A DNA stretch of 64,000 nt from positions 1-64,000 of IMG/VR virus record IMGVR_UViG_3300033233_000001; one strand, written 5' to 3'. The notes beneath the pieces are model-generated. The model ran no database searches. It was not told where the DNA came from and saw nothing but the letters and a program-made list of their open reading frames with translations. Position numbers and translations under genes: made by a program. This document shows, one piece after another, positions 9,492-50,305 of this stretch. Each line of letters begins with the position of its first letter. Position 1 is the stretch's first letter.

Positions 9492-10256
9492 ATGCGAAAT
9501 GCAACGATGGGTACCGGTCTGCTCCTCTCCATCATGTCGCTCGTGCTCTGCGCGGCCGGCATGCTGGAAGCGCAGGACGGCGAGGCAGGGGCACATCAGG
9601 CGGAGGATTCGGCGGTAGCAGTGGCAGCGGGAACGATCTCGGTCGACATGGGCTCGCAGCACGAGGGCGTGATGGAAGGCACAGGGGCGGAAGCTCCGGT
9701 AGCCGCGGAAGCTCTGGTAGCCAGTGCGCCTCGTCGACTTCCTGGCGTGACTCGTGATGATGCGTTGCTGGAGGCGAGGGCGTGTGCCCACGAAAGCACC
9801 TTCCGCGGCGGACGTGGCGGGACCTTCGATTGCGGAGCGCAAACACAAGTCATCCAGACACGTCGACGCGAGGGCGAGACCTTCTCTCACGCTCTTCTTC
9901 GTACGATGCCGCGGTTCGCGGCGCACACGACGTCGCGGGCTTGGGTGCACGCGTTGCCTGCTGGCCCTCTGCATGACGATCCTCCTGGCTGGCCATACGA
10001 GTATCCGGCGCGACATGACTCGGACGCCTGGCACTCGGTCTATCTGCGCGTGAGCGATTTCATGCTCGGCCGCGAGCCGCTGCCGTGCGCTGCGCCGCCG
10101 GAGCACTGGTTCGGCCGTCGTGCAGATCACGACCAACTCGCGGCGCGCCTCGCCTCTGGCCGTTGGGTCGAGGCCGATTGCAACCCCGGCGGCGCGCCAC
10201 AAACGCAGACGCTGAACGCGTATCTGACGCGCGTGAGCGCCCCGGTCTCGCCGTGA
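9492..10256 (+). CDS. Secreted/membrane protein, possible SleB-like cell-wall hydrolase
   Basis: N-terminal hydrophobic signal; DDALLEARACAHES resembles the hydrolase_2 D..LLAR.I..E motif. Confidence 0.4.
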   Translation: MRNATMGTGLLLSIMSLVLCAAGMLEAQDGEAGAHQAEDSAVAVAAGTISVDMGSQHEGVMEGTGAEAPVAAEALVASAPRRLPGVTRDDALLEARACAHESTFRGGRGGTFDCGAQTQVIQTRRREGETFSHALLRTMPRFAAHTTSRAWVHALPAGPLHDDPPGWPYEYPARHDSDAWHSVYLRVSDFMLGREPLPCAAPPEHWFGRRADHDQLAARLASGRWVEADCNPGGAPQTQTLNAYLTRVSAPVSP

Positions 10257-10336
10257 AGAAGGCCAGAGCACTGTCGAAGCCGCTTCCGAGGCCCTGGCCG
10301 GACGACATCGAGGTCGGCCAGGCAGTCTCGTTCGAC

Positions 10337-11678
10337 TTGAAATCCTCCGCTCCCTAGCCCGGAGGCTGAGGAAGCGGATTCCCAGGCTCACGCCCAAGAT
10401 CTTCCTGCTTCAACCCCGACCGCACCGGATTCCGAAGAACACGATGTCTTACACCAGGTCCACAGGCAGTCACCGCGAGACCCGCGGCCAGTTGTCGCAG
10501 TCCAGCTGCGAGAACGTTACGTGCAGCATTCACGTCGCGGTCGTGCTCAGCGCCACACTCTGGGCACTGCCATTCGCGCACGCTCAGCGGCAGGTCATCG
10601 AGAAGATACCCGCAGCAGCTGCATGTCTTGGAACTCGGAAACCAACGGTCGACCTTGATCAGGGTACGACCGTACCACTCGCACTTGTACTCCAACTGCC
10701 TCACCAACTCGCCCCAGCCGACATCGCTGATGGCCCGTGCCAGGCTCCGGTTCTTGATCATCCCACTGACGTTGAGACCTTCAACCGCGATCACTTGGGT
10801 TTCGCGAACGAGGTTGGTCGTCAACTTGTGGAGATTGTCCAGACGCCGGTCTGCTACGCGAGCGTTCAACTTGCCGAGCTTGATGCGAGCCTTGTCCCGA
10901 TTCTTCGAGCCTTTCTTTTTGCGCGCGAGACTGCGCGACAGGAACCTCTTGCGCCCGAGTTCACGGTCGTCGTGACGCGGGTTCGCGACCTTTTCACCCG
11001 TCGAGAACGTAACCAGCGACGTGATGCCCAGGTCAAGGCCGACGGCGCTCTCGATGGGCAGCGGCTTCAAGCGCTCGACTTTGTCCTCGCAGAGCAGCGA
11101 GACGTGCCAGCGGCCGGCAGCGTCGAGACCGACGGTCACGGTCGAGGGGTCGACGTTCTCCGGAAGCGGACGACTCCAACGGATGCCGAGCGGCGTGTCC
11201 ATCTTCGCGAGGGTCAGCTTGCCGTCGCGCCAGGTGAACGCGCTACGCGTGAACTCTGCGGAGCCACCGTCACCCTTCTTCTTGAACCTCGGGAACCTCG
11301 CTTGTTTCTTGAAGAACCTCTGCCGAGCACCGTGCATGTGCCGCAAGGCCTGTTGGAGCGGGACACACGAAACCGTGTTCAGCCAAGCGAATTCCGGCAG
11401 CTTCTTCCACGCCGTCAGGTGGGCACTCTGCTTGTTGTACGTCGGCGACTTCTTGGTCGCCGCGTACGAATTGTTGCATTCGCCCAGGCTATGGTTGTAG
11501 ACCCAGCGTGCACAGCCGATTGTCCGACGCAGCAGGGGCTCCTGCTCGGGCGTCGGGTAGAACCGGTAGCGGAAGCCGCGGAGGACCACGCGCAGAGCGT
11601 AGGGCACTTCGGCGACGAGATCAAGAACCGTTTCCTCCCCTGCCTGCAAAGCCGAGGCAGGGGTTTCCACGGAGGATC
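10337..11678 (-). mobile_element. IS200/IS605-family tnpB-only element 1 (IS1341-like)
   Basis: Right end GAAT + CCGCTTCC/GGGAGCGG hairpin ending TCAA; left-end hairpin CCCCTGCC/GGCAGGGG; inferred target TCAG (11679-11682); in-frame empty-site reconstruction. Confidence 0.85.
10354..11670 (-). CDS. tnpB: TnpB RNA-guided nuclease (true start possibly GTG 11589)
   Basis: FRYRFYPTPEQ HTH, RuvC VGLDLG / IAVEGL / DRDVNAA, Zn finger CSCCG...CPECG. Confidence 0.95.
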   Translation of the reverse strand: METPASALQAGEETVLDLVAEVPYALRVVLRGFRYRFYPTPEQEPLLRRTIGCARWVYNHSLGECNNSYAATKKSPTYNKQSAHLTAWKKLPEFAWLNTVSCVPLQQALRHMHGARQRFFKKQARFPRFKKKGDGGSAEFTRSAFTWRDGKLTLAKMDTPLGIRWSRPLPENVDPSTVTVGLDAAGRWHVSLLCEDKVERLKPLPIESAVGLDLGITSLVTFSTGEKVANPRHDDRELGRKRFLSRSLARKKKGSKNRDKARIKLGKLNARVADRRLDNLHKLTTNLVRETQVIAVEGLNVSGMIKNRSLARAISDVGWGELVRQLEYKCEWYGRTLIKVDRWFPSSKTCSCCGYLLDDLPLSVREWQCPECGAEHDRDVNAARNVLAAGLRQLAAGLAVTACGPGVRHRVLRNPVRSGLKQEDLGREPGNPLPQPPG

Positions 11679-28631: not shown

Positions 28632-29348
28632 ATGGGACGCGGGAATCACTTCGACGGCATCGGCGGGATCTTCTCGACGAGCATCTTCGGGCACACCGAC
28701 CGACTTCTGCCGGAGTGGGACGGTGACGACGAGCTTGATGCGCTCGTCGATGATGACGACAACGGTCGGCATCGGAGAGAGGAAGCCGTGTGGCCGGAGT
28801 CGATGAAGCTTGTGGAAGCGTCTCCGTCGTCGACGCTTCACGAGGAGAAGCCTTTCGAGTTCAAGTTTCCGCGTGTGGAGTCCGTGCCGCTGCCGCCGGG
28901 CGACTGGTACCTGTGGCTCGACGACGAACGCGACCCGCGCGTCGTGCTCGCGCCTGACAACGGCCCGAACTGCCTCGGCCTACGCTACGCGCAGTACGCG
29001 ACGACCGGGCTCGCCGCCGTCGACTGGAAGTGGGCGAAGTCGGTCACCGAGGCAATCGCTCTCTGCGAAGAGCACGGCGCGCCGAAGGTCATGGCTCTCG
29101 ATCATGACCTCGGCCTCGGTCCCGATCTCTCGACGCCGCAGACGGTCATGCCGTTCCTGCGCTGGCTCAGCGAGCGCGCCGATGTCACGACGTGGTTCGT
29201 GCACTCGGCGAACCCGGTCGGGCGCGACAACATCGCGAGCTACATGCGCTCGTGGGAGAGCGTGGCCGAGATCGTCGCTGCCAGCGAGAAGCGCATCGCC
29301 GTCGACTTCGACGAGGACGCGCCGCTCTCCCGCCCATCGCGCGCCTGA
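28632..29348 (+). CDS. Cyclic-phosphate-processing receiver-like domain protein
   Basis: LWLDDERDP, MALDHDLG, VHSANPVG motifs. Confidence 0.75.
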   Translation: MGRGNHFDGIGGIFSTSIFGHTDRLLPEWDGDDELDALVDDDDNGRHRREEAVWPESMKLVEASPSSTLHEEKPFEFKFPRVESVPLPPGDWYLWLDDERDPRVVLAPDNGPNCLGLRYAQYATTGLAAVDWKWAKSVTEAIALCEEHGAPKVMALDHDLGLGPDLSTPQTVMPFLRWLSERADVTTWFVHSANPVGRDNIASYMRSWESVAEIVAASEKRIAVDFDEDAPLSRPSRA

Positions 29349-29623
29349 TGTCTTTCGTCGTCCACTGCAAGAAGGCGCCGTATGACGTCTACATCGGGCG
29401 CCCGTCGCCCTGGGGCAACCCGTTCAGCCACAAGGCCGGCACGCTCGCCGAACACCGAGCCGCGACGCGCGAAGAGGCGGTCTCGAAGTACGAGGCGTGG
29501 CTGCTCGCGCAGCCAGCGCTGGTAGAGCGCGCAAAGCGCGAGCTACGCGGGAAGGTGCTGGCGTGCTGGTGCAGTCCGCTTGCCTGTCACGGAGACGTTC
29601 TTGCGCGTCTTGCGAACGAGTGA
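29348..29623 (+). CDS. DUF4326 family protein
   Basis: DVYIGRPSPWGNPF, LRGKVLACWCSPLACHGDVL. Confidence 0.9.
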   Translation: MSFVVHCKKAPYDVYIGRPSPWGNPFSHKAGTLAEHRAATREEAVSKYEAWLLAQPALVERAKRELRGKVLACWCSPLACHGDVLARLANE

Positions 29624-40142: not shown

Positions 40143-40871
40143 ATGGAACAGATCTACGGCGTCAACGGGCTGTTGTTCTGGTCGGAGCGTGAGATCCGCC
40201 TCCGCCAGATGATGCGCGAGCACTTCGCCGCCGAAATGACGGTGGCGCTACGACAGGTGAACGCGGCGTGGCAGGTGACGGAAATCGAAGCGCCACTTCT
40301 GACCCCGCGCGCAGCGATCAATCCGAACTACACAGACGACGATGTGTGGACGCAGGTGGGGCGTGACCTTGTTCTGCGTCCAGAGACGACGCCGGGCTCA
40401 TACGCGTACGCGTGCCACATGATCCAGCACGAGGTCTTCCGACCGCCGACGTGCGTGTGGCAGGCAGGCAAGAGCTTTCGTCACGAGCAGGACCAGGTGA
40501 CGAAGAACATGCGGCTCAAGGAGTTCCACCAGCAAGAGTTCCAGTGCATCTACGCCGCGGACACGGCGAACGACTACATGGAGGCGTTGGCGCCGCGGGT
40601 GAAGAGCATGATCGCTGAGATCGTCGGTCTGCCGTCGCGGCTCGCGGAGAGCGACCGGCTGCCCAGTTACAGCCGAAGGACGGTGGATGTCGAGGTCGAC
40701 AACGGCGACAAGTGGATGGAAGTCTGCTCGATGAGCACGCGGCTCGACTTCCCGATGAAGGCGCAGATCTTCACCAAGAAGGGCGTGATCAAGAAAGACC
40801 TGCTGGTGTTTGAGGTCGCGATCGGCTTGGACCGGTGCGTCTACAACTTCGAGCAGCGAGCGGCGAGGTAG
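40143..40871 (+). CDS. Class II aminoacyl-tRNA-synthetase-like catalytic core (Gly/Pro-type), no anticodon domain
   Basis: 242 aa; LRPETT, motif 2 QAGKSFRHE...MRLKEFHQQEFQ, RLPSYSRRTVDVE, EVCSMSTRLDF, motif 3 EVAIGLDR. Confidence 0.8.
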   Translation: MEQIYGVNGLLFWSEREIRLRQMMREHFAAEMTVALRQVNAAWQVTEIEAPLLTPRAAINPNYTDDDVWTQVGRDLVLRPETTPGSYAYACHMIQHEVFRPPTCVWQAGKSFRHEQDQVTKNMRLKEFHQQEFQCIYAADTANDYMEALAPRVKSMIAEIVGLPSRLAESDRLPSYSRRTVDVEVDNGDKWMEVCSMSTRLDFPMKAQIFTKKGVIKKDLLVFEVAIGLDRCVYNFEQRAAR

Positions 40872-40876
40872 TAGTC

Positions 40877-41749
40877 ATGTCGTATGCGCATTTGCCCAAC
40901 CTCTACAAGGACCAGACCGTCCTTCTCTTTCGCGAGTGTTACGCGATGGAGAAGCTGGACGGCACGAGCGCTCACGTCTCATGGCGTCACGGCAAGGTCT
41001 GGTTCTCGCCCGGTGGCGAGTCGGCGGTGCGCTTTCAGGCGTGCTTTGACGAGTCGACGCTGACTGCTGCGTTCGAGAAGCTCGGCCACGAGACGGTCAT
41101 CGTGTACGGCGAGGCCTACGGCGGCAGCTGCCAGAAGCAGACATGGCGGTACGGACCGAGCCTGCGGTTCTGCGCGTTCGAGGTGCAGATCGGCGACCTC
41201 TGGCTGTCCGTTCCCGAGGCGCACGAGTTCGTGAAGAAGCTCGGCCTCGACTTCGTGCATTACGTCAAGTGTTCAACCGACCTCGCGGTGCTCGATGCGC
41301 AGCGCGATGCACCGAGCGAGCAGGCGCGCCGTAACGGTGTCGAGGGCGACCAGCCACGGGAGGGCATCGTCATCCGTCCGCTCGTCGAGATGCGCATCGG
41401 CACCGATCGCATCGTCGCCAAGCACAAGCGCGACGACGAGCGTGAGACGGCGACGCCGCGCAAGGTCGTCGACCCCGCGCAGCAGGAGGTGCTGACGAAG
41501 GCCTCGGCGATTGCCGTCGAGTGGGTCACCTCGACTCGTCTTCAGCACGTGCTCGACAAGATGCCGCAGGGCATCGGGATCGAGAAGACCGGCGACGTCA
41601 TCCGCGCGATGACCGAGGACGTCGTGCGCGAAGGCGCTGGCGAGTTCGTCGACAGCAAAGAAGCGCGGCAGGCCATCGGTAAGCGCGCCGGGGAACTCTT
41701 CCGCGCGCACATCAAGAAGGCTGCGTTCGAGCCGAAGGAGACGACATGA
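40877..41749 (+). CDS. ATP-dependent RNA ligase (Rnl2-like)
   Basis: Motif I EKLDGT, VYGEAYG, FCAFEV, EGIVIRP, AKHK. Confidence 0.8.
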   Translation: MSYAHLPNLYKDQTVLLFRECYAMEKLDGTSAHVSWRHGKVWFSPGGESAVRFQACFDESTLTAAFEKLGHETVIVYGEAYGGSCQKQTWRYGPSLRFCAFEVQIGDLWLSVPEAHEFVKKLGLDFVHYVKCSTDLAVLDAQRDAPSEQARRNGVEGDQPREGIVIRPLVEMRIGTDRIVAKHKRDDERETATPRKVVDPAQQEVLTKASAIAVEWVTSTRLQHVLDKMPQGIGIEKTGDVIRAMTEDVVREGAGEFVDSKEARQAIGKRAGELFRAHIKKAAFEPKETT

Positions 41750-43092: not shown

Positions 43093-43389
43093 ATGCCGCT
43101 ACTTCGCACAGATCTGGATCGTCGCTTCTTCCTCGACGTGACCGCCGACGGTGCCGTCTTCATTCGCGAGCGGGGACATCCGAAGATGTCCGGCGCACTG
43201 CCGACGTTCACGACCGACACGCACGACCAGGCGCTGATGCTTCAGCAGCGGCACTGCCGTCGAGCCCGAGACGGCTCGGGCATCTACCGGCTCAACGAGC
43301 CGCCGACCGATCTCGATGCTCTGGGGGGCATCACCGATCTGTTCCGGCTCACCTACGAGGCGATGCTCGCGCGGGAGCAGCGCGCATGA
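43093..43389 (+). CDS. Hypothetical protein
   Basis: 98 aa; first gene after a short intergenic gap. Confidence 0.6.
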   Translation: MPLLRTDLDRRFFLDVTADGAVFIRERGHPKMSGALPTFTTDTHDQALMLQQRHCRRARDGSGIYRLNEPPTDLDALGGITDLFRLTYEAMLAREQRA

Positions 43390-44300
43390 CGCACTCAGGC
43401 ATCGGCGTGGTCATCGCACGCTTCCAGACGACGGAGCTTCACGCGGGGCACCGTGCGCTCCTCGACGAGGTCACGGCGCGGCATCGGCATGTGCTGATCG
43501 TGCTCGGCGTCGCGCGCACGTACGTGCCGACGTTCCAGAACCCGCTGGACGTGGCGCGCCGTGAGCAGATGGTGCTCCACCGGTATCCGAACGCGAAGAT
43601 CGTGAGTCACCGCGACTGCCGCTCGAACGTGCGCTGGTCGGACGGGCTCGACAAGCTCATCGCGAGTGCGATCCCCGGCCAGACAGAAGCCACGCTCTAC
43701 GGGTCGCGCGCGAGCTTCATCGGCAGCTACACGGGCAAGTATCCGTACGTCGAGCTTCCGGAGATCGCGGACATCTCGGGGACCGAGCTTCGACAGGAAG
43801 CAGTCGACCGCCCCGCGCTGTCGCGCGAGTTTCGGGCGGGCGTCGTCTACACGGCGACGACGCGCCCGCCGCTGGTGTTCCAGACCGTCGACATCGCGAT
43901 CGTGAACGGCGATCGGACGCAGGTGCTGCTCGGCAGCAAGCTGGAGGACGACGGCGGCCTGCGCTTCATCGGCGGCTTCGTCGATCCGAAGGACGCGAGC
44001 CTCGAAGCGGCTGCCAAGCGCGAGGCGTTCGAGGAGACCGGAGGCATCGAGCTAGCGGACTTCCGGTACATCGGGTCGTCGAAGATCGACGACTGGCGGT
44101 ACCGGGACACGCGCGACGCGATCATGACGAGCTTCTTCGTCGCGACCCACGTCTTCGGCGCGCCAAAGGCATCGGACGATCTGGACGGGTCGGCGAAGTG
44201 GTATCCGATCTTCGAGATCCGAGACAAGCTCGTCGAGGAGCATCGCGTGCTCGAATCGATGCTGCGGGCGCACGGAGATGGCGCGCGGTGGTGGCGATGA
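43386..44300 (+). CDS. nadM: Bifunctional NMN adenylyltransferase / Nudix ADP-ribose pyrophosphatase (NadM-Nudix)
   Basis: ARFQ...HAGH, NPL...R; Nudix box GGFVDPKDASLEAAAKREAFEETG. Confidence 0.9.
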   Translation: MTHSGIGVVIARFQTTELHAGHRALLDEVTARHRHVLIVLGVARTYVPTFQNPLDVARREQMVLHRYPNAKIVSHRDCRSNVRWSDGLDKLIASAIPGQTEATLYGSRASFIGSYTGKYPYVELPEIADISGTELRQEAVDRPALSREFRAGVVYTATTRPPLVFQTVDIAIVNGDRTQVLLGSKLEDDGGLRFIGGFVDPKDASLEAAAKREAFEETGGIELADFRYIGSSKIDDWRYRDTRDAIMTSFFVATHVFGAPKASDDLDGSAKWYPIFEIRDKLVEEHRVLESMLRAHGDGARWWR

Positions 44301-44722
44301 GTGACGACGAGCGGCTTCGGCTCAAGAAGTTCCTTCTCCGCCTTCACTGGGTCCTGAACCATCCGAGTGCAGGCGGCATGGCGACCATGGCCTATGTACA
44401 TGGCTACGAGTACAAGGGGCCGGTGCTCGACCAGGGCGAGATCAGGACGATGGCCGGTCTGCCGGTGGAGCTTCCGAAGCCGGAGTATCCGGAAACCGAG
44501 TTCTGCGTCGAGCGCAGCCCGCCGCGGCACAACGAGTACCGTGAGATGGGCAGGCCGGTGGAGGCGAACATCGCGTTTCGCGGGACAGCCGAAGCGTGCC
44601 ACGCGTGGATCAAGAAGGAGCGTGCCGACAAACGCTACGACGTGAACACGACTGGCCGCATGCTCCGTACGGAAGAGGAGTGCGAGCGCGCGTTCTGCGC
44701 GCTGTACTGCGTCGAGATCTAA
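44297..44722 (+). CDS. Hypothetical protein
   Basis: Overlap-coupled. Confidence 0.55.
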   Translation: MSDDERLRLKKFLLRLHWVLNHPSAGGMATMAYVHGYEYKGPVLDQGEIRTMAGLPVELPKPEYPETEFCVERSPPRHNEYREMGRPVEANIAFRGTAEACHAWIKKERADKRYDVNTTGRMLRTEEECERAFCALYCVEI

Positions 44723-45546
44723 TGGAGCCCTGGCTAGAAGCTTTCATGATTGGCGACGCGTACGGAAGTGGCTTTGAAATGAAGCCGCCGGAGTACGTCG
44801 CGGAGTTCAACGACGGTCTGACGTACCGGCAGCACGGACTCGATCCGACGCATCGGCCTGGCATGCCGACCGACGACACACAGATGACGATGGCTGTGCA
44901 GGACGTCATGCAGGACGGCTGGGCGAGCGCTCTGCCAATCTCGTACGCCCGTGCCTTCTGCAAAGCATACGCGGCGGCGCCTGCTCCTGGGTACGGCAGG
45001 AGGATGCGCGAGAACCTGGAGGCGGCGATCCGCGCCGAAGCGCCTGGGGCGGCACTGATGCTCGCATGCCAGGGCGGGCTTGCGAGCGGCGTGTTCGATA
45101 CGTGCGGGGCCGCGATGCGTGCGCTTCCGTGCGCTGTCAGCCGGTCGAGCGGCGATAATAGTGATGTCGCCTGTTCGGCGGTCGTGCAGGCGCGATCGAC
45201 GCACCATCATCCGGACTCGATCGACGCGGCTATCGCGGTGGCGCTCGCCGCATGGGTTCCTCTCAGGCTCGACGTCGCGACCGATTTTGTCGAGTGGCCG
45301 TCGCCGTCCAAGTGGACGCCAGGTCAGTGGGAGCGCGGCACCACGCGCGGCAAGGACATCGTGCAGGCGGCGCTCGGGCTGCTCGTACGTCACGACTCGC
45401 TCCATCGGCTGCTGATCGAGTCGGTCGCGCTCGGCGGCGACGTCGACACGCTCGCGGCGCTCTGTCTCGGCATCGGCGCGCTCGCGCCGAAGCGGTGGAA
45501 GAACGATCTGCCGCAGGCGCTGCGGGATGGGCTGGTGCGGCCGTGA
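44722..45546 (+). CDS. ADP-ribosylglycohydrolase (ARH/DraG family)
   Basis: IGDAYG, TDDTQMT, GAAMRALP, GGDVDTLAA. Confidence 0.9.
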   Translation: MEPWLEAFMIGDAYGSGFEMKPPEYVAEFNDGLTYRQHGLDPTHRPGMPTDDTQMTMAVQDVMQDGWASALPISYARAFCKAYAAAPAPGYGRRMRENLEAAIRAEAPGAALMLACQGGLASGVFDTCGAAMRALPCAVSRSSGDNSDVACSAVVQARSTHHHPDSIDAAIAVALAAWVPLRLDVATDFVEWPSPSKWTPGQWERGTTRGKDIVQAALGLLVRHDSLHRLLIESVALGGDVDTLAALCLGIGALAPKRWKNDLPQALRDGLVRP

Positions 45547-46585: not shown

Positions 46586-46830
46586 GTGAGCACGAGTTCG
46601 ATCCGAAGTGTCCGGACTGTCGACCGGTACTGCTGGACCCGACGACCGGTCGCATGCTGGGGCCGAAAGACCCGGCGATGGTTGCAGCCAGCAAGGCCTG
46701 GGACGAGCAGCTGACGCGCGAACAGCAGGAGGCGTGTCATCGGGTCTGGGTGAAGAACAGCCGAGATCCCGCCGACCTGGAAGCGCTGGAGTGCTTCGCG
46801 GCCATGATGCAGAAGATGGCTGGGAACTGA
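46582..46830 (+). CDS. Hypothetical protein
   Basis: CPDC; GTGA overlap. Confidence 0.6.
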   Translation: MSEHEFDPKCPDCRPVLLDPTTGRMLGPKDPAMVAASKAWDEQLTREQQEACHRVWVKNSRDPADLEALECFAAMMQKMAGN

Positions 46831-46844
46831 GAGGAGACACCAAG

Positions 46845-48215
46845 ATGGGTAGCGGCGAGAACATTTTGCTAGCCAGCGACAGTTACAAGATTTCTCACTG
46901 GCGGCAATATCCGAAGGGCACGCAGCGCGTGTATTCCTTCATGGAGTCTCGCGGTGGCGTCCACGCCGACGTGACCTTCTTCGGCCTCCAGTACCTGCTG
47001 ACGCGGTACCTCGAAGGGCCGGTGGTTACGGCCGAAGATCTGGCCGAAGCCACTGACTTCTACCGCGCGCACTTCGGCGCAGATCTGCTGAACGTCGACG
47101 GCTGGCAGCACATCATCGACAAGCACGGCGGCCGTCTACCGGTCGAGATCTGCGCCGTTCCGGAGGGCACGGTCGTGCCCGTGCGCAACGTGCTCATGAC
47201 GATCGAGAACACGGACCCGAAGGTCCCGTGGCTGACGAATTTTCTAGAGACGTTGCTGTGCCAGGTGTGGTACCCGGTCACGGTTGCCACGCAATCGCGC
47301 GCGATGCGCAAGCTGATCCTCGACGCGCTGGAGCATACCGGCGACCCGTCTCTCGTGGATTTCAAGCTCCACGACTTCGGCTTCCGCGGCAGCACGTCGG
47401 TCGAGTCCGCTGGCATCGGCGCGGCGGCGCACCTCGTGAACTTCAAGGGCACTGACACCGTCGCTGGCCTCGTGCTCGCGCGCGACTACTACAGCGAGCC
47501 GATGGCCGGTTTTAGCGTGCCTGCCAGCGAACACAGCACCATCACGTCCTGGGGCCGCGAGCACGAGGTCGACGCGTACCGCAACATGCTCGACCAGTTC
47601 CCGACCGGGCTCGTGGCCTGCGTGTCGGACAGCTACGACATCTACGCGGCCTGTCGCGATCTCTGGGGTACCGAGCTTCGAGACCGCGTGCTCTCGCGCG
47701 ACGGCTGTCTCGTCGTGCGGCCGGACAGCGGCGATCCGCCGACCGTCGTCGTCACGGTGCTCGACATCCTCGGCGAGAAGTTCGGGTTCACCATCAACGA
47801 GAAGGGCTACCGCGTGCTCGACCCGCACGTCCGCGTCATCCAGGGAGACGGCATCGACTACGAGATGCTTGGGAAGATCCTCTCTGCGATGGAGCGTGCC
47901 CGCTGGTCGGCCGATAACGTCGCGTTCGGCTCTGGCGGGGGCCTTCTCCAGAAGGTGAACCGCGACACGCAGAAGTTTGCGATCAAGTGCTCGGCCGTGC
48001 AGATCAACGGTGAATGGCGTGACGTGCTCAAGGACCCGGTAACCGACCCTGGGAAGAAGTCGAAAGCCGGGCGCCTGCGTCTCGTCCGCGAGGACGGCGT
48101 GTACAAGACAGTGACCGGCGAGGGCCCGACGCTGCTGGAGCCGGTGTTCCGTGATGGCGTCGTGTTGCGGCGACAGACGTTCGCTGACGTGCGCCGCCGG
48201 GCTGTTGCCACATGA
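46845..48215 (+). CDS. nadV: Nicotinamide phosphoribosyltransferase (NAMPT)
   Basis: SDSYKISH, HDFGFRG, PASEHS, VSDSYD, RPDSGDP, IQGDGI, FGSGGGLLQ, RDTQKFAIKCS. Confidence 0.97.
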   Translation: MGSGENILLASDSYKISHWRQYPKGTQRVYSFMESRGGVHADVTFFGLQYLLTRYLEGPVVTAEDLAEATDFYRAHFGADLLNVDGWQHIIDKHGGRLPVEICAVPEGTVVPVRNVLMTIENTDPKVPWLTNFLETLLCQVWYPVTVATQSRAMRKLILDALEHTGDPSLVDFKLHDFGFRGSTSVESAGIGAAAHLVNFKGTDTVAGLVLARDYYSEPMAGFSVPASEHSTITSWGREHEVDAYRNMLDQFPTGLVACVSDSYDIYAACRDLWGTELRDRVLSRDGCLVVRPDSGDPPTVVVTVLDILGEKFGFTINEKGYRVLDPHVRVIQGDGIDYEMLGKILSAMERARWSADNVAFGSGGGLLQKVNRDTQKFAIKCSAVQINGEWRDVLKDPVTDPGKKSKAGRLRLVREDGVYKTVTGEGPTLLEPVFRDGVVLRRQTFADVRRRAVAT

Positions 48216-48532: not shown

Positions 48533-48994
48533 TCACTGTTCCTCGGCGCGGGAACCCCGTCCTTCAGGACGAGGAGGAGCGCCGCTCCGGTTTTGGTTCT
48601 GGACGTAGCGCGCGACGACTTCTAGCGGCGCGCCGCCGCACGACACGGCGCAGTAGCTCGGCGACCAGAAGTGATCTCCCCAGAGCACGTTCGTGACCTC
48701 GCGAAAGTTCTGCGCCCGCAGCCGTCGCGCGGACACACCCTTGAGCGAGTTCACGAGCTTGGCGATCGCGACCTTCGGCGGGTAGTCGATGAGCAGATGC
48801 GCGTGGTCCGGCTCGAAGTTGGCCTCCCGAAGCTCGCTTCCGAAGTCGGCGCAGACCTCAACCCACGACGCTCGCAGAATCTCGAACGCTCGCTCCGAGA
48901 TCGCGCCTCGCCGGTACTTCGGCACGAAGACCAAGTGCACGGACAGCTTGTGCACGACGTGCCGCCCCTTGCGAAAGTTCTCGACCTGTGCCAT
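48533..48994 (-). CDS. tnpA: IS200-type Y1 HUH transposase
   Basis: HLVFVPKYRR, DHAHLLI (HUH), LVNSLKGVSAR, FWSPSY, RYVQNQ. Confidence 0.97.
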   Translation of the reverse strand: MAQVENFRKGRHVVHKLSVHLVFVPKYRRGAISERAFEILRASWVEVCADFGSELREANFEPDHAHLLIDYPPKVAIAKLVNSLKGVSARRLRAQNFREVTNVLWGDHFWSPSYCAVSCGGAPLEVVARYVQNQNRSGAPPRPEGRGSRAEEQ

Positions 48995-50305
48995 CCTGGC
49001 GTTTCTAGCATGTCGGACACCGACGGCAAGACCAAAAAGCTCAGGACGTCTCGGTACCGGGTCTATCCGACCGACGAGCAGGTCGCCCGCATCGAAGCGT
49101 GGCAGGATCCGCTGCGTCTGCTCTGGAATCTCGGCAACCAGCAGTACTTGTTCTCGCAGGAGCGTTGCCGTTACGGTCGGAAGTGGCCGCACCCGTTCGA
49201 GCAGGCGAACCAGTTGACCGAACTTCGCGCTGAACACGAGCGGCTGCGCGACGTCCCGTACGATCTTGCCGCGCGCGTCTTCGTCGAGTTGAACCTGTCC
49301 TGGCAGCGATGCTGGGCTGGGCTCGCCGAGCAGCCGCGGTTCAAGTCGAAGAATCGCGGCGACTGGACGGTCATGTGCGAGCCGAACCCGAAGGTGTTTC
49401 GGGCCGAGGATGATGCGATCGTCTTCCCGAAGCTCGGGCGGATCGAAGCGGTCGTCCACCGTCCTCTGCTCGGCAAGCCGAAGACCTGCACGATTACCCG
49501 TGACATAGATGAGTGGTACGTCTCGATCGCCTGCGAAGTCGTACGCGATCCTGATGCGTTGCCGCCGCCCGTGCCGGTCGGCGCGCCGGTCGGCATCGAC
49601 CGCGGCGTAGTGAACCTGTTGATGGACAGCAACGCGCGGCCGACGGCGAACGCGCGGTACGACGACCAGACACGTGTGCAGGTCGCTCGTGCGCAGCGCT
49701 CTGCGGCCAAGAAGAAAAAGGGAGGAAAGAACAGGAAGAAAGCAAACAAGGTTGTATCCCGTCTGCGAAGGAAGGCGCGCCGGCAGCGCGACGCCGTTCT
49801 GCATCGCGAGAGTCTTCACTACGCCAAAAATCACAGCGTGGTGGTCATCGAGAAGCTGAACCTCCCGAACATGACGAGGAGTGCGAGTGGCACGGTCGAG
49901 GAGCCCGGTACGAACGTCGCGCAGAAGCGCGGGTTGAACCGGAGCATCCTCGGCGCGGGCCTCGGCAAGTTCGGGACGTACTTGAAGTACAAGGCCAAGG
50001 ACCACGGGTCGACGGTTGTCGAGGTACCGGCGGCCTACACGTCTCAGACGTGCTCGTCGTGCGGACACGTCGCGGCCGAGTCCCGGAAGACACAGAGCGA
50101 GTTCGAGTGCGTCGCGTGCGGTTATTGCCTGCATGCTGACGTGAACGCTGCCAAGGTGATACTCAGCCGTGGAACCCACGGCGGTGCAGTCTGCGGAGGA
50201 TCCGGCGCCCTAGGCCGCCCGAAGAAGCAGAAACTCCGCGTCGTGAGGCGCGGATCTCGATCTGTGTCCGGGAAAGCCCCGGACTTCAGGCCGGGGTAGG
50301 TTTAT
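48537..50305 (+). mobile_element. Complete IS605-type element 3 (divergent tnpA and tnpB)
   Basis: Left-end hairpin CCCCGTCC-TTCA-GGACGAGG after TCAC; right end AAAG-CCCCGG/CCGGGG-TAGGTTTAT; both ends align to element 2. Confidence 0.9.
49010..50299 (+). CDS. tnpB: TnpB RNA-guided nuclease, 429 aa
   Basis: RYRVYPTDEQ; RuvC VGIDRG / VVIEKL / HADVNAA; CSSCG...CVACG. Confidence 0.97.
   Translation: MSDTDGKTKKLRTSRYRVYPTDEQVARIEAWQDPLRLLWNLGNQQYLFSQERCRYGRKWPHPFEQANQLTELRAEHERLRDVPYDLAARVFVELNLSWQRCWAGLAEQPRFKSKNRGDWTVMCEPNPKVFRAEDDAIVFPKLGRIEAVVHRPLLGKPKTCTITRDIDEWYVSIACEVVRDPDALPPPVPVGAPVGIDRGVVNLLMDSNARPTANARYDDQTRVQVARAQRSAAKKKKGGKNRKKANKVVSRLRRKARRQRDAVLHRESLHYAKNHSVVVIEKLNLPNMTRSASGTVEEPGTNVAQKRGLNRSILGAGLGKFGTYLKYKAKDHGSTVVEVPAAYTSQTCSSCGHVAAESRKTQSEFECVACGYCLHADVNAAKVILSRGTHGGAVCGGSGALGRPKKQKLRVVRRGSRSVSGKAPDFRPG

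What the first reader, a model, noticed from the sequence alone, without database searches (positions are those of the whole stretch)
40143..41749. Anticodon-less GlyRS-like catalytic core coupled to an RNA ligase
Seen: a 242-aa protein with class II motifs 2 and 3 but no anticodon-binding or insertion domain, 5 nt upstream of an Rnl2-type ligase. Known: phage RNA ligases repair tRNAs cut by anticodon nucleases, and truncated aaRS paralogs often do non-canonical chemistry (protein/carrier aminoacylation, Ap4A synthesis). Inference: a tRNA rescue module that recharges cleaved or repaired tRNAs independent of the anticodon, or a new amino-acid ligase.
Basis: partly seen in the sequence, partly recalled or inferred. 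Interest (0 to 1): 0.7.

Follow-up and report, generated by a model that had tools for sequence, protein, structure and literature searches.

The report
Stand-alone minimal GlyRS core family
A jumbo phage carries a 242-residue glycyl-tRNA-synthetase catalytic core with no tRNA-anticodon reader; it belongs to a large, unstudied family found in giant phages and in Rhizobium-type bacteria, and its position next to an RNA ligase is peculiar to this phage rather than a conserved two-gene module.

Summary
Gene A (40143-40871) is a class II aaRS core whose best sequence and fold matches are dimeric (alpha2-type) GlyRS. It lacks the anticodon-binding domain and the insertions. It ends 5 nt before a PF09414/Rnl2-like RNA ligase (40877-41749).

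It is not an orphan. More than 1200 sequence clusters of free-standing 210-260 aa proteins form one clade, far from canonical GlyRS. They occur in jumbo phages (Caulobacter, Brevundimonas, Sinorhizobium and Xanthomonas phages, plus many metagenomic ones). A nested clade sits in the chromosomes of Rhizobium, Shinella, Devosia, Phenylobacterium and Paraburkholderia. The ATP-binding arginines and the three-glutamate glycine pocket are invariant in 103 sequences.

Thirty phage genomes that carry the gene hold no canonical GlyRS. In them the gene lies among tRNA arrays, other aaRS genes, PTH2, EF-Tu, RNA ligases and NAD-salvage genes. Direct adjacency to a ligase occurs in only 2 of 28 lineages, and the bacterial copies have no RNA-repair neighbours.

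The best reading is an autonomous, anticodon-independent glycine-activating enzyme, most likely a minimal GlyRS for tRNA-Gly. The acceptor is inferred, not shown. The family is uncharacterised and I found no paper on it.

The parts
40143..40871 (+). Minimal stand-alone GlyRS-type class II catalytic core (242 aa). Motif 1 is around P51-P55, the TxE loop is RPETT 79-83, motif 2 is GKSFRHE...RLKEFHQQEF 109-133, the GlyRS-specific block is SDRLPSYS..T.D.E / ME.CS.S.R.D 170-202, and motif 3 is FEVAIGLDR 223-231.
40865..40876 (+). Junction between the two genes: GAGG (a possible ribosome-binding site for the ligase) inside the end of gene A, stop TAG 40869-40871, a second in-frame TAG 40872-40874, and a 5-nt spacer 40872-40876.
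   Evidence: sequence read directly
40877..41749 (+). ATP-dependent RNA ligase of the PF09414 (Rnl2-like) family, 290 aa, with motif I lysine K26 in EKLDGT. It is one of three PF09414 paralogues in this genome.
28632..29348 (+). Context: a cREC_REC (cyclic-phosphate processing receiver) domain protein, an RNA-end-healing candidate in the same island. The overlapping ORF 29192-29623 carries DUF4326.
43386..44300 (+). Context: bifunctional NMN adenylyltransferase-Nudix (NadM-Nudix type), part of NAD salvage.
44596..45546 (+). Context: ADP-ribosylglycohydrolase.
46608..48215 (+). Context: nicotinamide phosphoribosyltransferase (NAMPT_N + NAPRTase). With the NMNAT-Nudix gene it forms a two-enzyme NAD+ salvage pair.

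Best explanation
Gene A encodes a member of a large, uncharacterised family of free-standing, minimal GlyRS-type class IIa catalytic cores.

Shown: the fold and the closest relatives are dimeric (alpha2-type) GlyRS. All residues that in GlyRS bind ATP and the glycine ammonium group are invariant. The protein has no anticodon-binding domain, and the genome has none either. The family forms one clade. It is widespread in jumbo phages and also sits as a solitary chromosomal gene in several Alphaproteobacteria and in Paraburkholderia.

[quoted passage not shown] Both phage-encoded tRNA-Gly of this genome carry G1:C72, C2:G71, G3:C70 and U73. The enzyme would then be an anticodon-independent GlyRS that supplements or bypasses the host's unrelated alpha2beta2 GlyRS during infection. 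It would belong to the phages' translation-support and counter-defence island (tRNAs, other trimmed-down aaRSs, PTH2, RNA ligases, NAD+ salvage).

The Rnl2-like ligase 5 nt downstream is an independent RNA-repair enzyme. It may be co-transcribed here, but it is not an obligate partner.
For: Identity and fold:
- Pfam, PDB and NCBIfam hits all point to GlyRS.
- The AF2 model has pLDDT 92.8, and its top 25 Swiss-Prot and top PDB fold hits are alpha2 GlyRS catalytic domains.

Active site, invariant in 33 phage and 70 genome sequences:
- E81 (RPETT), E132 (QQEFQ) and E224 (vlE-A-G-DR) align with the three glutamates of the GlyRS glycine pocket.
- R113/E115 (motif 2), R124, F128 and R231 (motif 3) are also invariant.
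- The motif 2 loop has the same length as in GlyRS.

Family:
- 1223 clusters at 90% identity, and 127 clusters at 50% identity with E<1e-30.
- Nearly all members are 210-260 aa with no fused domains.
- The family is monophyletic against canonical GlyRS (SH-aLRT 100).

No other GlyRS in the phages that carry it:
- No GlyQ was found in 30 genomes.
- The HGTP_anticodon domain was found in 9 of 29 genomes. The 8 such proteins fetched and typed are ThrRS or ProRS; the ninth, in phage Phosso, was not typed.

Translation context:
- The gene lies in or beside tRNA arrays in many lineages. Two tRNA-Gly genes lie 47 nt downstream in L043, and tRNA-Gly lies within 5 kb in L030, L033, L034, L048, L050 and L052.
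- The immediate downstream gene is CysRS (overlapping stop/start), IleRS or an AlaRS core in other lineages.
- PTH2, EF-Tu and EF-Ts lie nearby.

Autonomy:
- The gene is retained as a solitary gene in a non-prophage chromosomal context across the Rhizobium leguminosarum complex. No neighbour is conserved across genera.

Precedent:
- Natural ~270-aa class II cores that charge tRNA without reading the anticodon exist (N-terminal-domain-less PylRS, among the fold hits).
Against: - No biochemical data exist. Neither adenylation nor the acceptor is demonstrated.
- Canonical GlyRS uses anticodon C35/C36 and insertion domains to hold tRNA, and this protein has neither. Whether it can bind tRNA productively is unknown.
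- The complex prediction with tRNA-Gly was not folded by the tool, so there is no evidence either way.
- Bacteria that keep the gene already have GlyQS. Simple redundancy does not obviously explain its retention, which hints at a different acceptor or a special condition.
- tRNA-Gly is not consistently the nearest tRNA. In the Phosso-like lineage the only nearby tRNA is a tRNA(CUA).
- The position that is Ser in GlyRS (E-P-S) is Ala here.
Confidence: 0.5

Rival explanations
1. A glycine (or other small amino acid) adenylating enzyme whose acceptor is not tRNA. The acceptor could be a protein (EpmA/PoxA-like modification of a translation factor), a carrier protein or small molecule (as with the SerRS-like amino acid:carrier-protein ligases), or ATP itself (Ap4A or dinucleotide synthesis, as reported for human GlyRS).
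For: - The protein lacks every known tRNA-body-binding element.
- Bacteria with a complete GlyQS retain it as a solitary gene.
- R2K ATP-grasp peptide ligases, Nudix and NAD-metabolism genes recur nearby in phages.
- The B. japonicum Gly:carrier-protein ligase appears among the fold hits (rank 34).
- It is established knowledge that truncated aaRS paralogues usually work on non-tRNA acceptors (review PMC9437257).
Against: - No carrier-protein gene or other partner is conserved next to it in 28 phage lineages, or across bacterial genera.
- The neighbourhood is dominated by tRNAs and genuine aaRSs.
- The motif 2 loop, which contacts the acceptor end in class IIa enzymes, has the GlyRS length and is highly conserved.
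Confidence: 0.25
2. An anticodon-blind synthetase that charges phage suppressor tRNAs, forming a natural 'code-change' pair analogous to PylRS/tRNA-Pyl. The substrate would be tRNA(CUA) in the Phosso-like lineage, or a tRNA-Gly(UCA) in TGA-recoded phages.
For: - A tRNA(CUA) is the only tRNA within +-10 kb in all ten loci of the Phosso-like lineage. It lies 16-2000 nt upstream of the gene on the same strand, and L056 has two copies.
- Phage L051 is TGA-recoded, and a TGA sits at the near-invariant Gly of the 'NGL' motif in this very gene.
- Phage operons pairing an aaRS with a suppressor tRNA have been reported (PMC12636597).
- An enzyme without an anticodon reader would tolerate any anticodon.
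Against: - The linkage is confined to one syntenic lineage, so it counts as one evolutionary event.
- These tRNA(CUA) have variable acceptor stems and G73, unlike phage tRNA-Gly, which have U73.
- TAG is still used as a stop codon in those loci.
- In the window's own genome the tRNA(CUA) is Gln-like and lies 80 kb away.
- Most carriers, and the bacterial copies, show no recoding.
Confidence: 0.1
3. One reading: a two-gene tRNA rescue module in which the ligase reseals tRNAs cut by anticodon nucleases and the anticodon-less synthetase recharges them.
For: - A 5-nt spacing with a ribosome-binding site inside gene A suggests co-expression here.
- L054 also has an RNA-ligase-like gene 2 nt downstream.
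- RNA ligases are enriched within 10 kb: 10 of 20 lineages against 2.5 expected.
- A cREC end-healing candidate lies 11 kb upstream.
Against: - Adjacency occurs in only 2 of 28 lineages, and with unrelated ligase families.
- The count within 1 kb is not significant: 1 observed against 0.26-0.36 expected.
- The window's genome has three PF09414 paralogues.
- NAD-salvage genes also lie close in about half of the genomes.
- Chromosomal homologues have no RNA-repair neighbours.
- A resealed tRNA has an intact anticodon and needs no special synthetase.
Confidence: 0.08
4. A catalytically silent regulatory paralogue, like HisZ, that binds an amino acid or nucleotide and regulates another enzyme such as an NAD-salvage phosphoribosyltransferase.
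For: - There are weak NCBIfam hits to HisS and HisZ.
- Nampt/NMNAT genes recur nearby.
Against: - Every catalytic residue (motif 2 and 3 arginines, three glutamates) is invariant over 103 sequences, unlike HisZ.
- The closest relatives are GlyRS, not HisRS.
- No partner is conserved.
Confidence: 0.03

Closest known systems
Dimeric (alpha2-type) glycyl-tRNA synthetase (Mycobacterium, Thermus, archaeal and eukaryotic GlyRS; e.g. PDB 8t5n, 1ati, 4kr2)
   Same: It has the class IIa catalytic fold. It shares the RPET(A/T) loop, the motif 2 FR.E...R.(R/K)EF.Q.E with the same loop length, the GlyRS-specific block (L.HY/SYS..T.D.E ... E..G/S...R.D) and motif 3 E-x-(S/A)-x-G-x-DR. The three-glutamate glycine pocket is conserved.
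   Different: It is about 240 aa instead of 440-690. It has no C-terminal HGTP anticodon-binding domain, no N-terminal extension and, except in a few ~330-aa members, no insertion domains. Identity to GlyRS is only about 20%, and it sits on a very long branch from canonical GlyRS. It occurs in hosts whose own GlyRS is the unrelated alpha2beta2 type.
PylRS lacking the N-terminal domain (e.g. M. alvus PylRS, ~275 aa)
   Same: It is a free-standing class II catalytic core of similar size that charges a tRNA without reading its anticodon. This shows that such a minimal enzyme can be a true synthetase.
   Different: It belongs to a different subclass and has a different amino-acid pocket. PylRS is always paired with a dedicated tRNA(CUA), whereas here such pairing is seen in only one lineage.
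Amino acid:[carrier protein] ligases (SerRS-like; Bradyrhizobium Bll0957, PDB 4h2w)
   Same: They are truncated class II cores from Alphaproteobacteria that activate glycine and have no tRNA-binding domain.
   Different: They derive from SerRS, not GlyRS, are encoded next to their carrier protein, and are zinc-dependent. No carrier gene accompanies the present family.
EpmA/PoxA (GenX)
   Same: It is an anticodon-domain-less class II core kept as a solitary bacterial gene. It transfers its amino acid to a tRNA-shaped protein, EF-P.
   Different: It is a class IIb LysRS derivative that works with EpmB/EpmC. There is no sequence affinity to the present family.
T4 Rnl2 / PF09414 RNA ligases (for gene B)
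   Same: It has the nucleotidyltransferase motifs (KxDG and the rest) and matches phage RNA-ligase PHROG 548 over its full length.
   Different: Its match to the NCBIfam Rnl2 equivalog is weak (23.6 bits against a cut-off of 197). It is 290 aa against 334 aa, and no solved structure is detectable by sequence.

Membership tests
Class II aminoacyl-tRNA synthetase catalytic core | Antiparallel beta-sheet fold with motifs 1, 2 (fRxE) and 3 (GxGxGxxR-like, ending in Arg) | tested here: met
   Pfam PF00587 and PF01409 score above their cut-offs. The AF2 model has pLDDT 92.8, and the 50 best PDB fold hits listed are all class II aaRS cores or direct relatives such as the Gly:carrier-protein ligase. 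Motif residues are invariant.
GlyRS (alpha2 type) | The catalytic domain is closest to GlyRS in sequence and structure | tested here: met
   PDB profile search gives 3e-16 to Mycobacterium GlyRS. NCBIfam NF003211 gives 1e-14. The top Foldseek hits in PDB and Swiss-Prot are GlyRS.
GlyRS (alpha2 type) | Negatively charged glycine pocket (three Glu) plus the ATP-binding Arg of motifs 2 and 3 | tested here: met
   E81, E132, E224, R113 and R231 are invariant in 103 sequences and align with the GlyRS positions. The correspondence to Thermus E188/E239/E359 rests on my knowledge of the published structure.
GlyRS (alpha2 type) | C-terminal HGTP anticodon-binding domain | tested here: not met
   The protein ends 11 residues after the motif 3 arginine. 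PF03129 is absent from the protein and from the whole 298-kb genome.
GlyRS (alpha2 type) | Curated whole-protein score for the equivalog model | tested here: not met
   NF003211 scores 54 bits against a cut-off of 312, and TIGR00389 scores 27 bits against 243.
GlyRS (alpha2 type) | Glycylation of tRNA-Gly | not testable with these tools
Biochemistry is needed.
Rnl2-family RNA ligase (gene B) | Covalent nucleotidyltransferase motifs with the KxDG lysine, plus the PF09414 domain | tested here: met
   PF09414 scores 5e-12, above its cut-off. EKLDGT lies at residues 25-30. PHROG 548 scores 1e-21 over residues 2-281.
Rnl2-family RNA ligase (gene B) | Equivalog-level similarity to T4 Rnl2, including its C-terminal domain | tested here: inconclusive
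   TIGR02307 scores 23.6 bits against a cut-off of 197. No PDB sequence hit was found. No structure was predicted.
Amino acid:[carrier protein] ligase | SerRS-derived core encoded next to a phosphopantetheinyl carrier protein | tested here: not met
   The closest relatives are GlyRS, not SerRS. No neighbour is conserved in 28 phage lineages or across bacterial genera.
HisZ-type regulatory paralogue | HisRS-derived, catalytic residues degenerate, partnered with HisG | tested here: not met
   Catalytic residues are invariant. TIGR00443 scores only 15 bits.
   Adjacency is found in 2 of 28 lineages. Clustering exists only at the island level, within 10 kb.

The most novel reading that the evidence does not exclude
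The family is a natural anticodon-blind aminoacyl-tRNA synthetase: a roughly 240-residue GlyRS core that reads only the acceptor end. Phages would use it to charge tRNAs whose anticodons the host enzyme would reject. Candidates are suppressor tRNA(CUA) genes encoded directly upstream in the Phosso-like lineage, tRNA-Gly(UCA) in TGA=Gly recoded phages, and tRNAs altered to escape or survive anticodon-targeting defences. It would then be a portable 'code-change / defence-bypass' device, later domesticated by rhizobia. Alternatively, it glycylates a universal non-tRNA target.
Probability: 0.15. Interest if true: 0.85.

Novelty: new variant of a known kind. Interest (0 to 1): 0.6.

Why it matters
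Truncated aaRS paralogues such as HisZ, EpmA, AsnA and the carrier-protein ligases have repeatedly revealed new chemistry. None derived from GlyRS has been described.

This one is abundant, with more than 1200 sequence clusters, and strongly conserved, at 55-70% identity among the closest ~120 clusters. It is present in cultivable systems: Caulobacter phages CcrSC and CcrBL9, Brevundimonas phages, Sinorhizobium phage Phosso, Xanthomonas phage XbC2, and Rhizobium leguminosarum itself.

If it charges tRNA, it would be the smallest natural GlyRS and a natural example of acceptor-stem-only recognition. That bears on the origin of the 'operational RNA code', on phage take-over of translation, and on orthogonal pairs for genetic-code expansion. 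If it does not charge tRNA, it is a new glycine ligase with an unknown universal target.

The work also corrects database names. Records variously call it 'serine-tRNA synthetase', 'glycyl-tRNA synthetase' or 'hypothetical protein'.

Tried and rejected
- **Ligase linkage by similarity.** tblastn of all window ORFs between 28 and 52 kb against 44 related loci found only gene A shared and no relative of the ligase.
- **Split GlyRS.** I looked for an anticodon domain encoded separately. PF03129 is absent from the genome.
- **Alpha2beta2-type GlyQ.** It is absent from 30 genomes.
- **Conserved partner gene.** All-against-all clustering of neighbours found nothing in more than 5 of 28 phage lineages, and nothing across bacterial genera.
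- **PHROGs and PADLOC.** Neither library has a family for gene A.
- **Complex prediction.** The homodimer with phage tRNA-Gly was not folded by the tool, so there is no evidence either way.
- **Isoelectric point.** The family median is about 5.5, which is uninformative.
- **tRNA(CUA) as a disguised tRNA-Gly.** The acceptor stems and G73 do not resemble tRNA-Gly.
- **Literature.** Searches for a GlyRS-like or truncated GlyRS in phages found nothing describing the family. The jumbo-phage survey PMC7824862 does not mention it.
- **Prophage origin of the Rhizobium copy.** This is rejected. The flanking genes are an Mla-type transporter, a GGDEF protein, a D-Ala-D-Ala carboxypeptidase, an isochorismatase and a 2367-aa repeat protein.
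Full report
**What is there.** The window is the first 64 kb of a 297,749-bp virus record with about 65% G+C, a jumbo phage. Gene A runs from ATG 40143 to TAG 40871 and encodes 242 aa. The ATG matches the conserved N-terminus of its family, so the longer TTG-initiated ORF from 39975 is not the gene. Five bases after its stop, gene B (40877-41749, 290 aa) begins. A GAGG lies 9 nt upstream of that ATG, and a second in-frame TAG follows the first.

Gene A matches Pfam tRNA-synt_2b and tRNA-synt_2d. Gene B matches Pfam RNA_ligase PF09414 and PHROG 548 over its full length, and has the lysine motif EKLDGT.

**Gene A is a GlyRS-type core.**
- By sequence, the nearest solved structures are Mycobacterium, Nanoarchaeum and Thermus GlyRS. 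The family profile scores 3e-16.
- The best NCBIfam model is glycine--tRNA ligase, but far below its whole-protein cut-off.
- An AlphaFold2 model built on 46 family members is confident, with pLDDT 92.8 and pTM 0.90.
- Its best Foldseek matches in the PDB and in Swiss-Prot models are alpha2-type GlyRS. The alignment covers only their catalytic domains, roughly residues 28-340 of about 460.
- The alignments place E81 (RPETT), E132 (QQEFQ) and E224 (vlE-A-G-DR) on the three glutamates that form the glycine pocket of GlyRS. They place R113/E115 and R231 on the motif 2 and motif 3 ATP-binding residues.
- These residues, together with R124, F128, Q130 and the GlyRS-specific block SDRLP-YS..T.D / E..S.S.R.D, are invariant in 33 phage and 70 genome-derived sequences.
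- The protein stops 11 residues after the motif 3 arginine. No HGTP anticodon domain exists anywhere in the genome.

So the enzyme very probably still binds ATP and glycine. It has lost every element that canonical GlyRS uses to hold the tRNA body.

**It is a large family, not an oddity.**
- A word-indexed search found 1223 clusters. Most are 240-260 aa, and the 120 best listed are 52-70% identical to the window protein. Many lie on contigs of 200-560 kb.
- An exhaustive profile search found 127 clusters at 50% identity with E<1e-30. Almost all are 210-260 aa with no fused domains.
- A few ~330-aa members carry an ~80-residue insertion exactly at the GlyRS 'insertion 1' site.
- Cultured carriers are Sinorhizobium phage Phosso, Xanthomonas phage XbC2, five Brevundimonas jumbo phages and the Caulobacter Bertelyvirus group (CcrSC, CcrBL9, C1, C2, RB23, J4, BL47). 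They annotate the gene variously as serine-tRNA synthetase, RNA synthetase class II, aminoacyl-tRNA synthetase or hypothetical protein.
- PHROGs and PADLOC have no model for it.
- Full-text searches found no paper that describes it. The jumbo-phage gene survey PMC7824862 and the aaRS-paralogue review PMC9437257 do not list it.

**It is also a bacterial chromosomal gene.** A scan of one genome per prokaryotic species found the gene in about 30 Rhizobium species or strains, and in Shinella, Pseudaminobacter, Devosia, Phenylobacterium, a Caulobacter and two Paraburkholderia. Identity to the phage protein is 45-57%. NCBI names it only 'aminoacyl--tRNA ligase-related protein'.

In Rhizobium it is a solitary gene in a conserved, non-prophage setting. 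Its neighbours are an Mla-type ABC transporter, a GGDEF-GAF protein, a D-Ala-D-Ala carboxypeptidase, an isochorismatase and a 2367-aa repeat protein. No neighbour is shared between genera.

In a tree rooted with canonical GlyRS the family is one clade (SH-aLRT 100) on a very long branch. The alphaproteobacterial chromosomal copies form one shallow clade nested inside a well-supported phage clade (support 98). The Paraburkholderia copies sit separately, next to Xanthomonas phage XbC2. This favours at least two transfers from phages into bacteria. The basal branching is unresolved and the tree came from a quick search, so this is an inference.

Retention as a lone gene means the protein works with components that every cell has, and needs no phage partner.

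**Testing the proposed link to RNA repair.**
- The window's ligase has no tblastn relative within +-10 kb of gene A in 44 related loci.
- I collapsed these loci into 28 lineages. No neighbouring family occurs in more than five of them.
- The commonest neighbours are NMN adenylyltransferase, NAD synthase, ClpP, PTH2, PF09414 ligase, EF-Tu, DUF4326, HNH and CysRS. Contig look-ups add R2K ATP-grasp, Rnl1, class I LysRS, EF-Ts and PRPP synthetase.
- I mapped all PF09414 and PF09511 (Rnl1) genes in 27 genomes. Some RNA ligase lies within 10 kb of gene A in 16 of 27 genomes. After collapsing the Phosso-like lineage the count is 10 of 20, against 2.5 expected for random placement, and none of 5000 simulations reached it.
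- Within 1 kb there is only the window itself: 1 observed against 0.26-0.36 expected, which is not significant.
- A second case of direct adjacency exists in the most divergent member, L054. There the ligase-like gene belongs to a different family, RLIG1.
- Cytidylyltransferase-like (NMNAT) genes lie within about 15 kb in 13 of 27 genomes. Nampt or NadR/PnuC lies 1-4 kb away in CcrSC and XbC2.
- The window has the same island: a cREC end-processing candidate, DUF4326, a DNA methyltransferase, HNH, gene A, the ligase, NMNAT-Nudix, an ADP-ribosylglycohydrolase and Nampt.

The honest summary is that gene A lives in the accessory 'translation / RNA repair / NAD salvage' island of these phages. It is not an operon partner of an RNA ligase.

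**Evidence bearing on the acceptor.**
- In 30 carrier genomes there is no alpha2beta2-type GlyQ.
- HGTP_anticodon domains occur in 9 of 29 genomes. The 8 proteins I fetched and typed are N-terminally trimmed ThrRS (~400 aa) or insertion-less ProRS (368 aa), never GlyRS. The ninth hit, in phage Phosso, was not typed. Gene A is thus the only GlyRS-type gene identified in these phages, which tend to carry trimmed-down synthetases.
- The gene often lies inside tRNA arrays. Two tRNA-Gly genes lie 47 nt downstream in L043, and tRNA-Gly lies within 5 kb in L030, L033, L034, L048, L050 and L052. Because the arrays hold many species, this is only weak evidence for specificity.
- The next gene downstream is CysRS (overlapping stop/start), IleRS, or a 240-aa AlaRS N-terminal core in three other lineages.
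- The window's genome encodes 36 tRNAs. Its two tRNA-Gly genes carry G1:C72, C2:G71, G3:C70 and U73, and most tRNA-Gly genes in related phages share them; U73 is in all those examined. By established knowledge these are the acceptor-stem identity elements of bacterial tRNA-Gly.
- Natural class II cores of about 270 aa that charge tRNA without touching the anticodon exist (N-domain-less PylRS) and appear among the fold hits.

I therefore rank 'anticodon-independent minimal GlyRS acting on tRNA-Gly' first, at about 0.5. Adenylation of glycine I hold at about 0.8. The tRNA acceptor is an inference. The attempted complex prediction with tRNA-Gly was not run by the tool and gives no evidence.

**Rivals.**
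- A non-tRNA acceptor (protein, carrier, small molecule or Ap4A) is a serious alternative, at about 0.25. Bacteria with a complete GlyQS keep the gene, and truncated aaRS paralogues usually have non-tRNA targets.
- A more exotic reading, at about 0.1, comes from two things seen in passing. In all ten loci of the Phosso-like lineage the only tRNA within 10 kb is a tRNA(CUA) 16-2000 nt upstream of gene A on the same strand. In the TGA-recoded phage L051 a TGA occupies the near-invariant glycine of the 'NGL' motif of this gene.
- An enzyme that ignores the anticodon is what a suppressor tRNA needs, and phage operons pairing an aaRS with a suppressor tRNA are known (PMC12636597).
- Against this reading, those tRNA(CUA) have G73 and variable stems, unlike tRNA-Gly. 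TAG still terminates genes in those loci. The linkage is a single syntenic lineage.

**Verdict.** What remains is a real, abundant and uncharacterised family: a GlyRS-derived, anticodon-less, free-standing catalytic core shared by jumbo phages and rhizobia. Relative to known truncated aaRS paralogues it is a new variant of a known kind. It can be tested directly, because cultured phages and Rhizobium strains carry it.

Noticed in passing
L001 5267-5342; L022 9872-9948; L024 9536-9610; L025 9524-9599; L026 8053-8126; L028 9775-9850; L029 9005-9080; L031 8892-8965; L032 9540-9614; L056 7530-7603 and 7908-7985: In the whole Phosso-like phage lineage, a tRNA with anticodon CUA (an amber-suppressor type) is the only tRNA within 10 kb. 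It lies just upstream of the GlyRS-like gene on the same strand. The discriminator is G73 and the acceptor stems vary, so it is not tRNA-Gly-like.
   Followed up: partly
L051 (IMGVR_UViG_3300021964_000180), gene at about 10001-10660: This is a 35% G+C phage whose ORFs tile only if TGA is read through. In its GlyRS-like gene a TGA sits at the near-invariant glycine of the 'NGL' motif, which suggests TGA=Gly (code 25-like) recoding.
   Followed up: partly
Own genome G000:C1:120544-120935 (outside the window): A PTH2 peptidyl-tRNA hydrolase gene is followed within 24 nt by a tRNA(CUA) with a Gln-like 5' end (UGGGG). This may be an amber suppressor in the window's own phage. Whether any genes are TAG-recoded was not examined.
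   Followed up: no
window 40869-40874: Gene A ends in two consecutive in-frame TAG codons. This is worth noting in a genome that encodes a tRNA(CUA).
   Followed up: no
window 43386-44300, 44596-45546, 46608-48215: An NMNAT-Nudix gene and a Nampt gene form a two-enzyme NAD+ salvage pair of the kind reported to counter NAD-depleting defences. An ADP-ribosylglycohydrolase lies between them.
   Followed up: partly
window 48671-50299: A TnpB/IS605 OrfB-type protein (OrfB_IS605 + Cas12f1-like TNB domains, 542 aa) lies inside the jumbo-phage genome, directly after the NAD-salvage genes.
   Followed up: no
window 28632-29348 and 29192-29623: A cREC_REC (cyclic-phosphate processing) domain ORF overlaps a DUF4326 ORF. 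DUF4326 also recurs next to the GlyRS-like gene in four other lineages (for example L053 9663-9971, directly upstream).
   Followed up: partly
L065-L072 (related jumbo phages); L034 10889-11611: Phage synthetases are systematically trimmed. ThrRS lacks the N-terminal editing/TGS part (~400 aa), ProRS lacks the editing insertion (368 aa), and there is a 240-aa AlaRS N-terminal core directly downstream of the GlyRS-like gene in L034.
   Followed up: partly
L122 and about 30 other Rhizobium loci; L087, L098, L102, L108, L136-L137: The family is a conserved solitary chromosomal gene in Rhizobium, Shinella, Devosia, Phenylobacterium, Caulobacter sp. and Paraburkholderia, named only 'aminoacyl--tRNA ligase-related protein'. 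In the tree it is nested within the phage sequences.
   Followed up: yes
Own genome G000:C1:136109-136624 and 269522-269986: There are two further PF09414 RNA ligase paralogues in the same phage, both scoring better against the Pfam model than the one next to gene A.
   Followed up: no
L048 10001-10721: In this phage the GlyRS-like gene is split into two overlapping ORFs (10001-10486 and 10467-10721). This is a frameshift, a sequencing error or a pseudogene.
   Followed up: no
ESM Atlas clusters: Free-standing class II cores of about 240-250 aa also form many clusters in Actinomycetota (feature score 0.90). A 323-aa 'glycine--tRNA ligase family' cluster without an anticodon domain occurs in Chloroflexota. 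These may be further anticodon-less GlyRS-like lineages.
   Followed up: no
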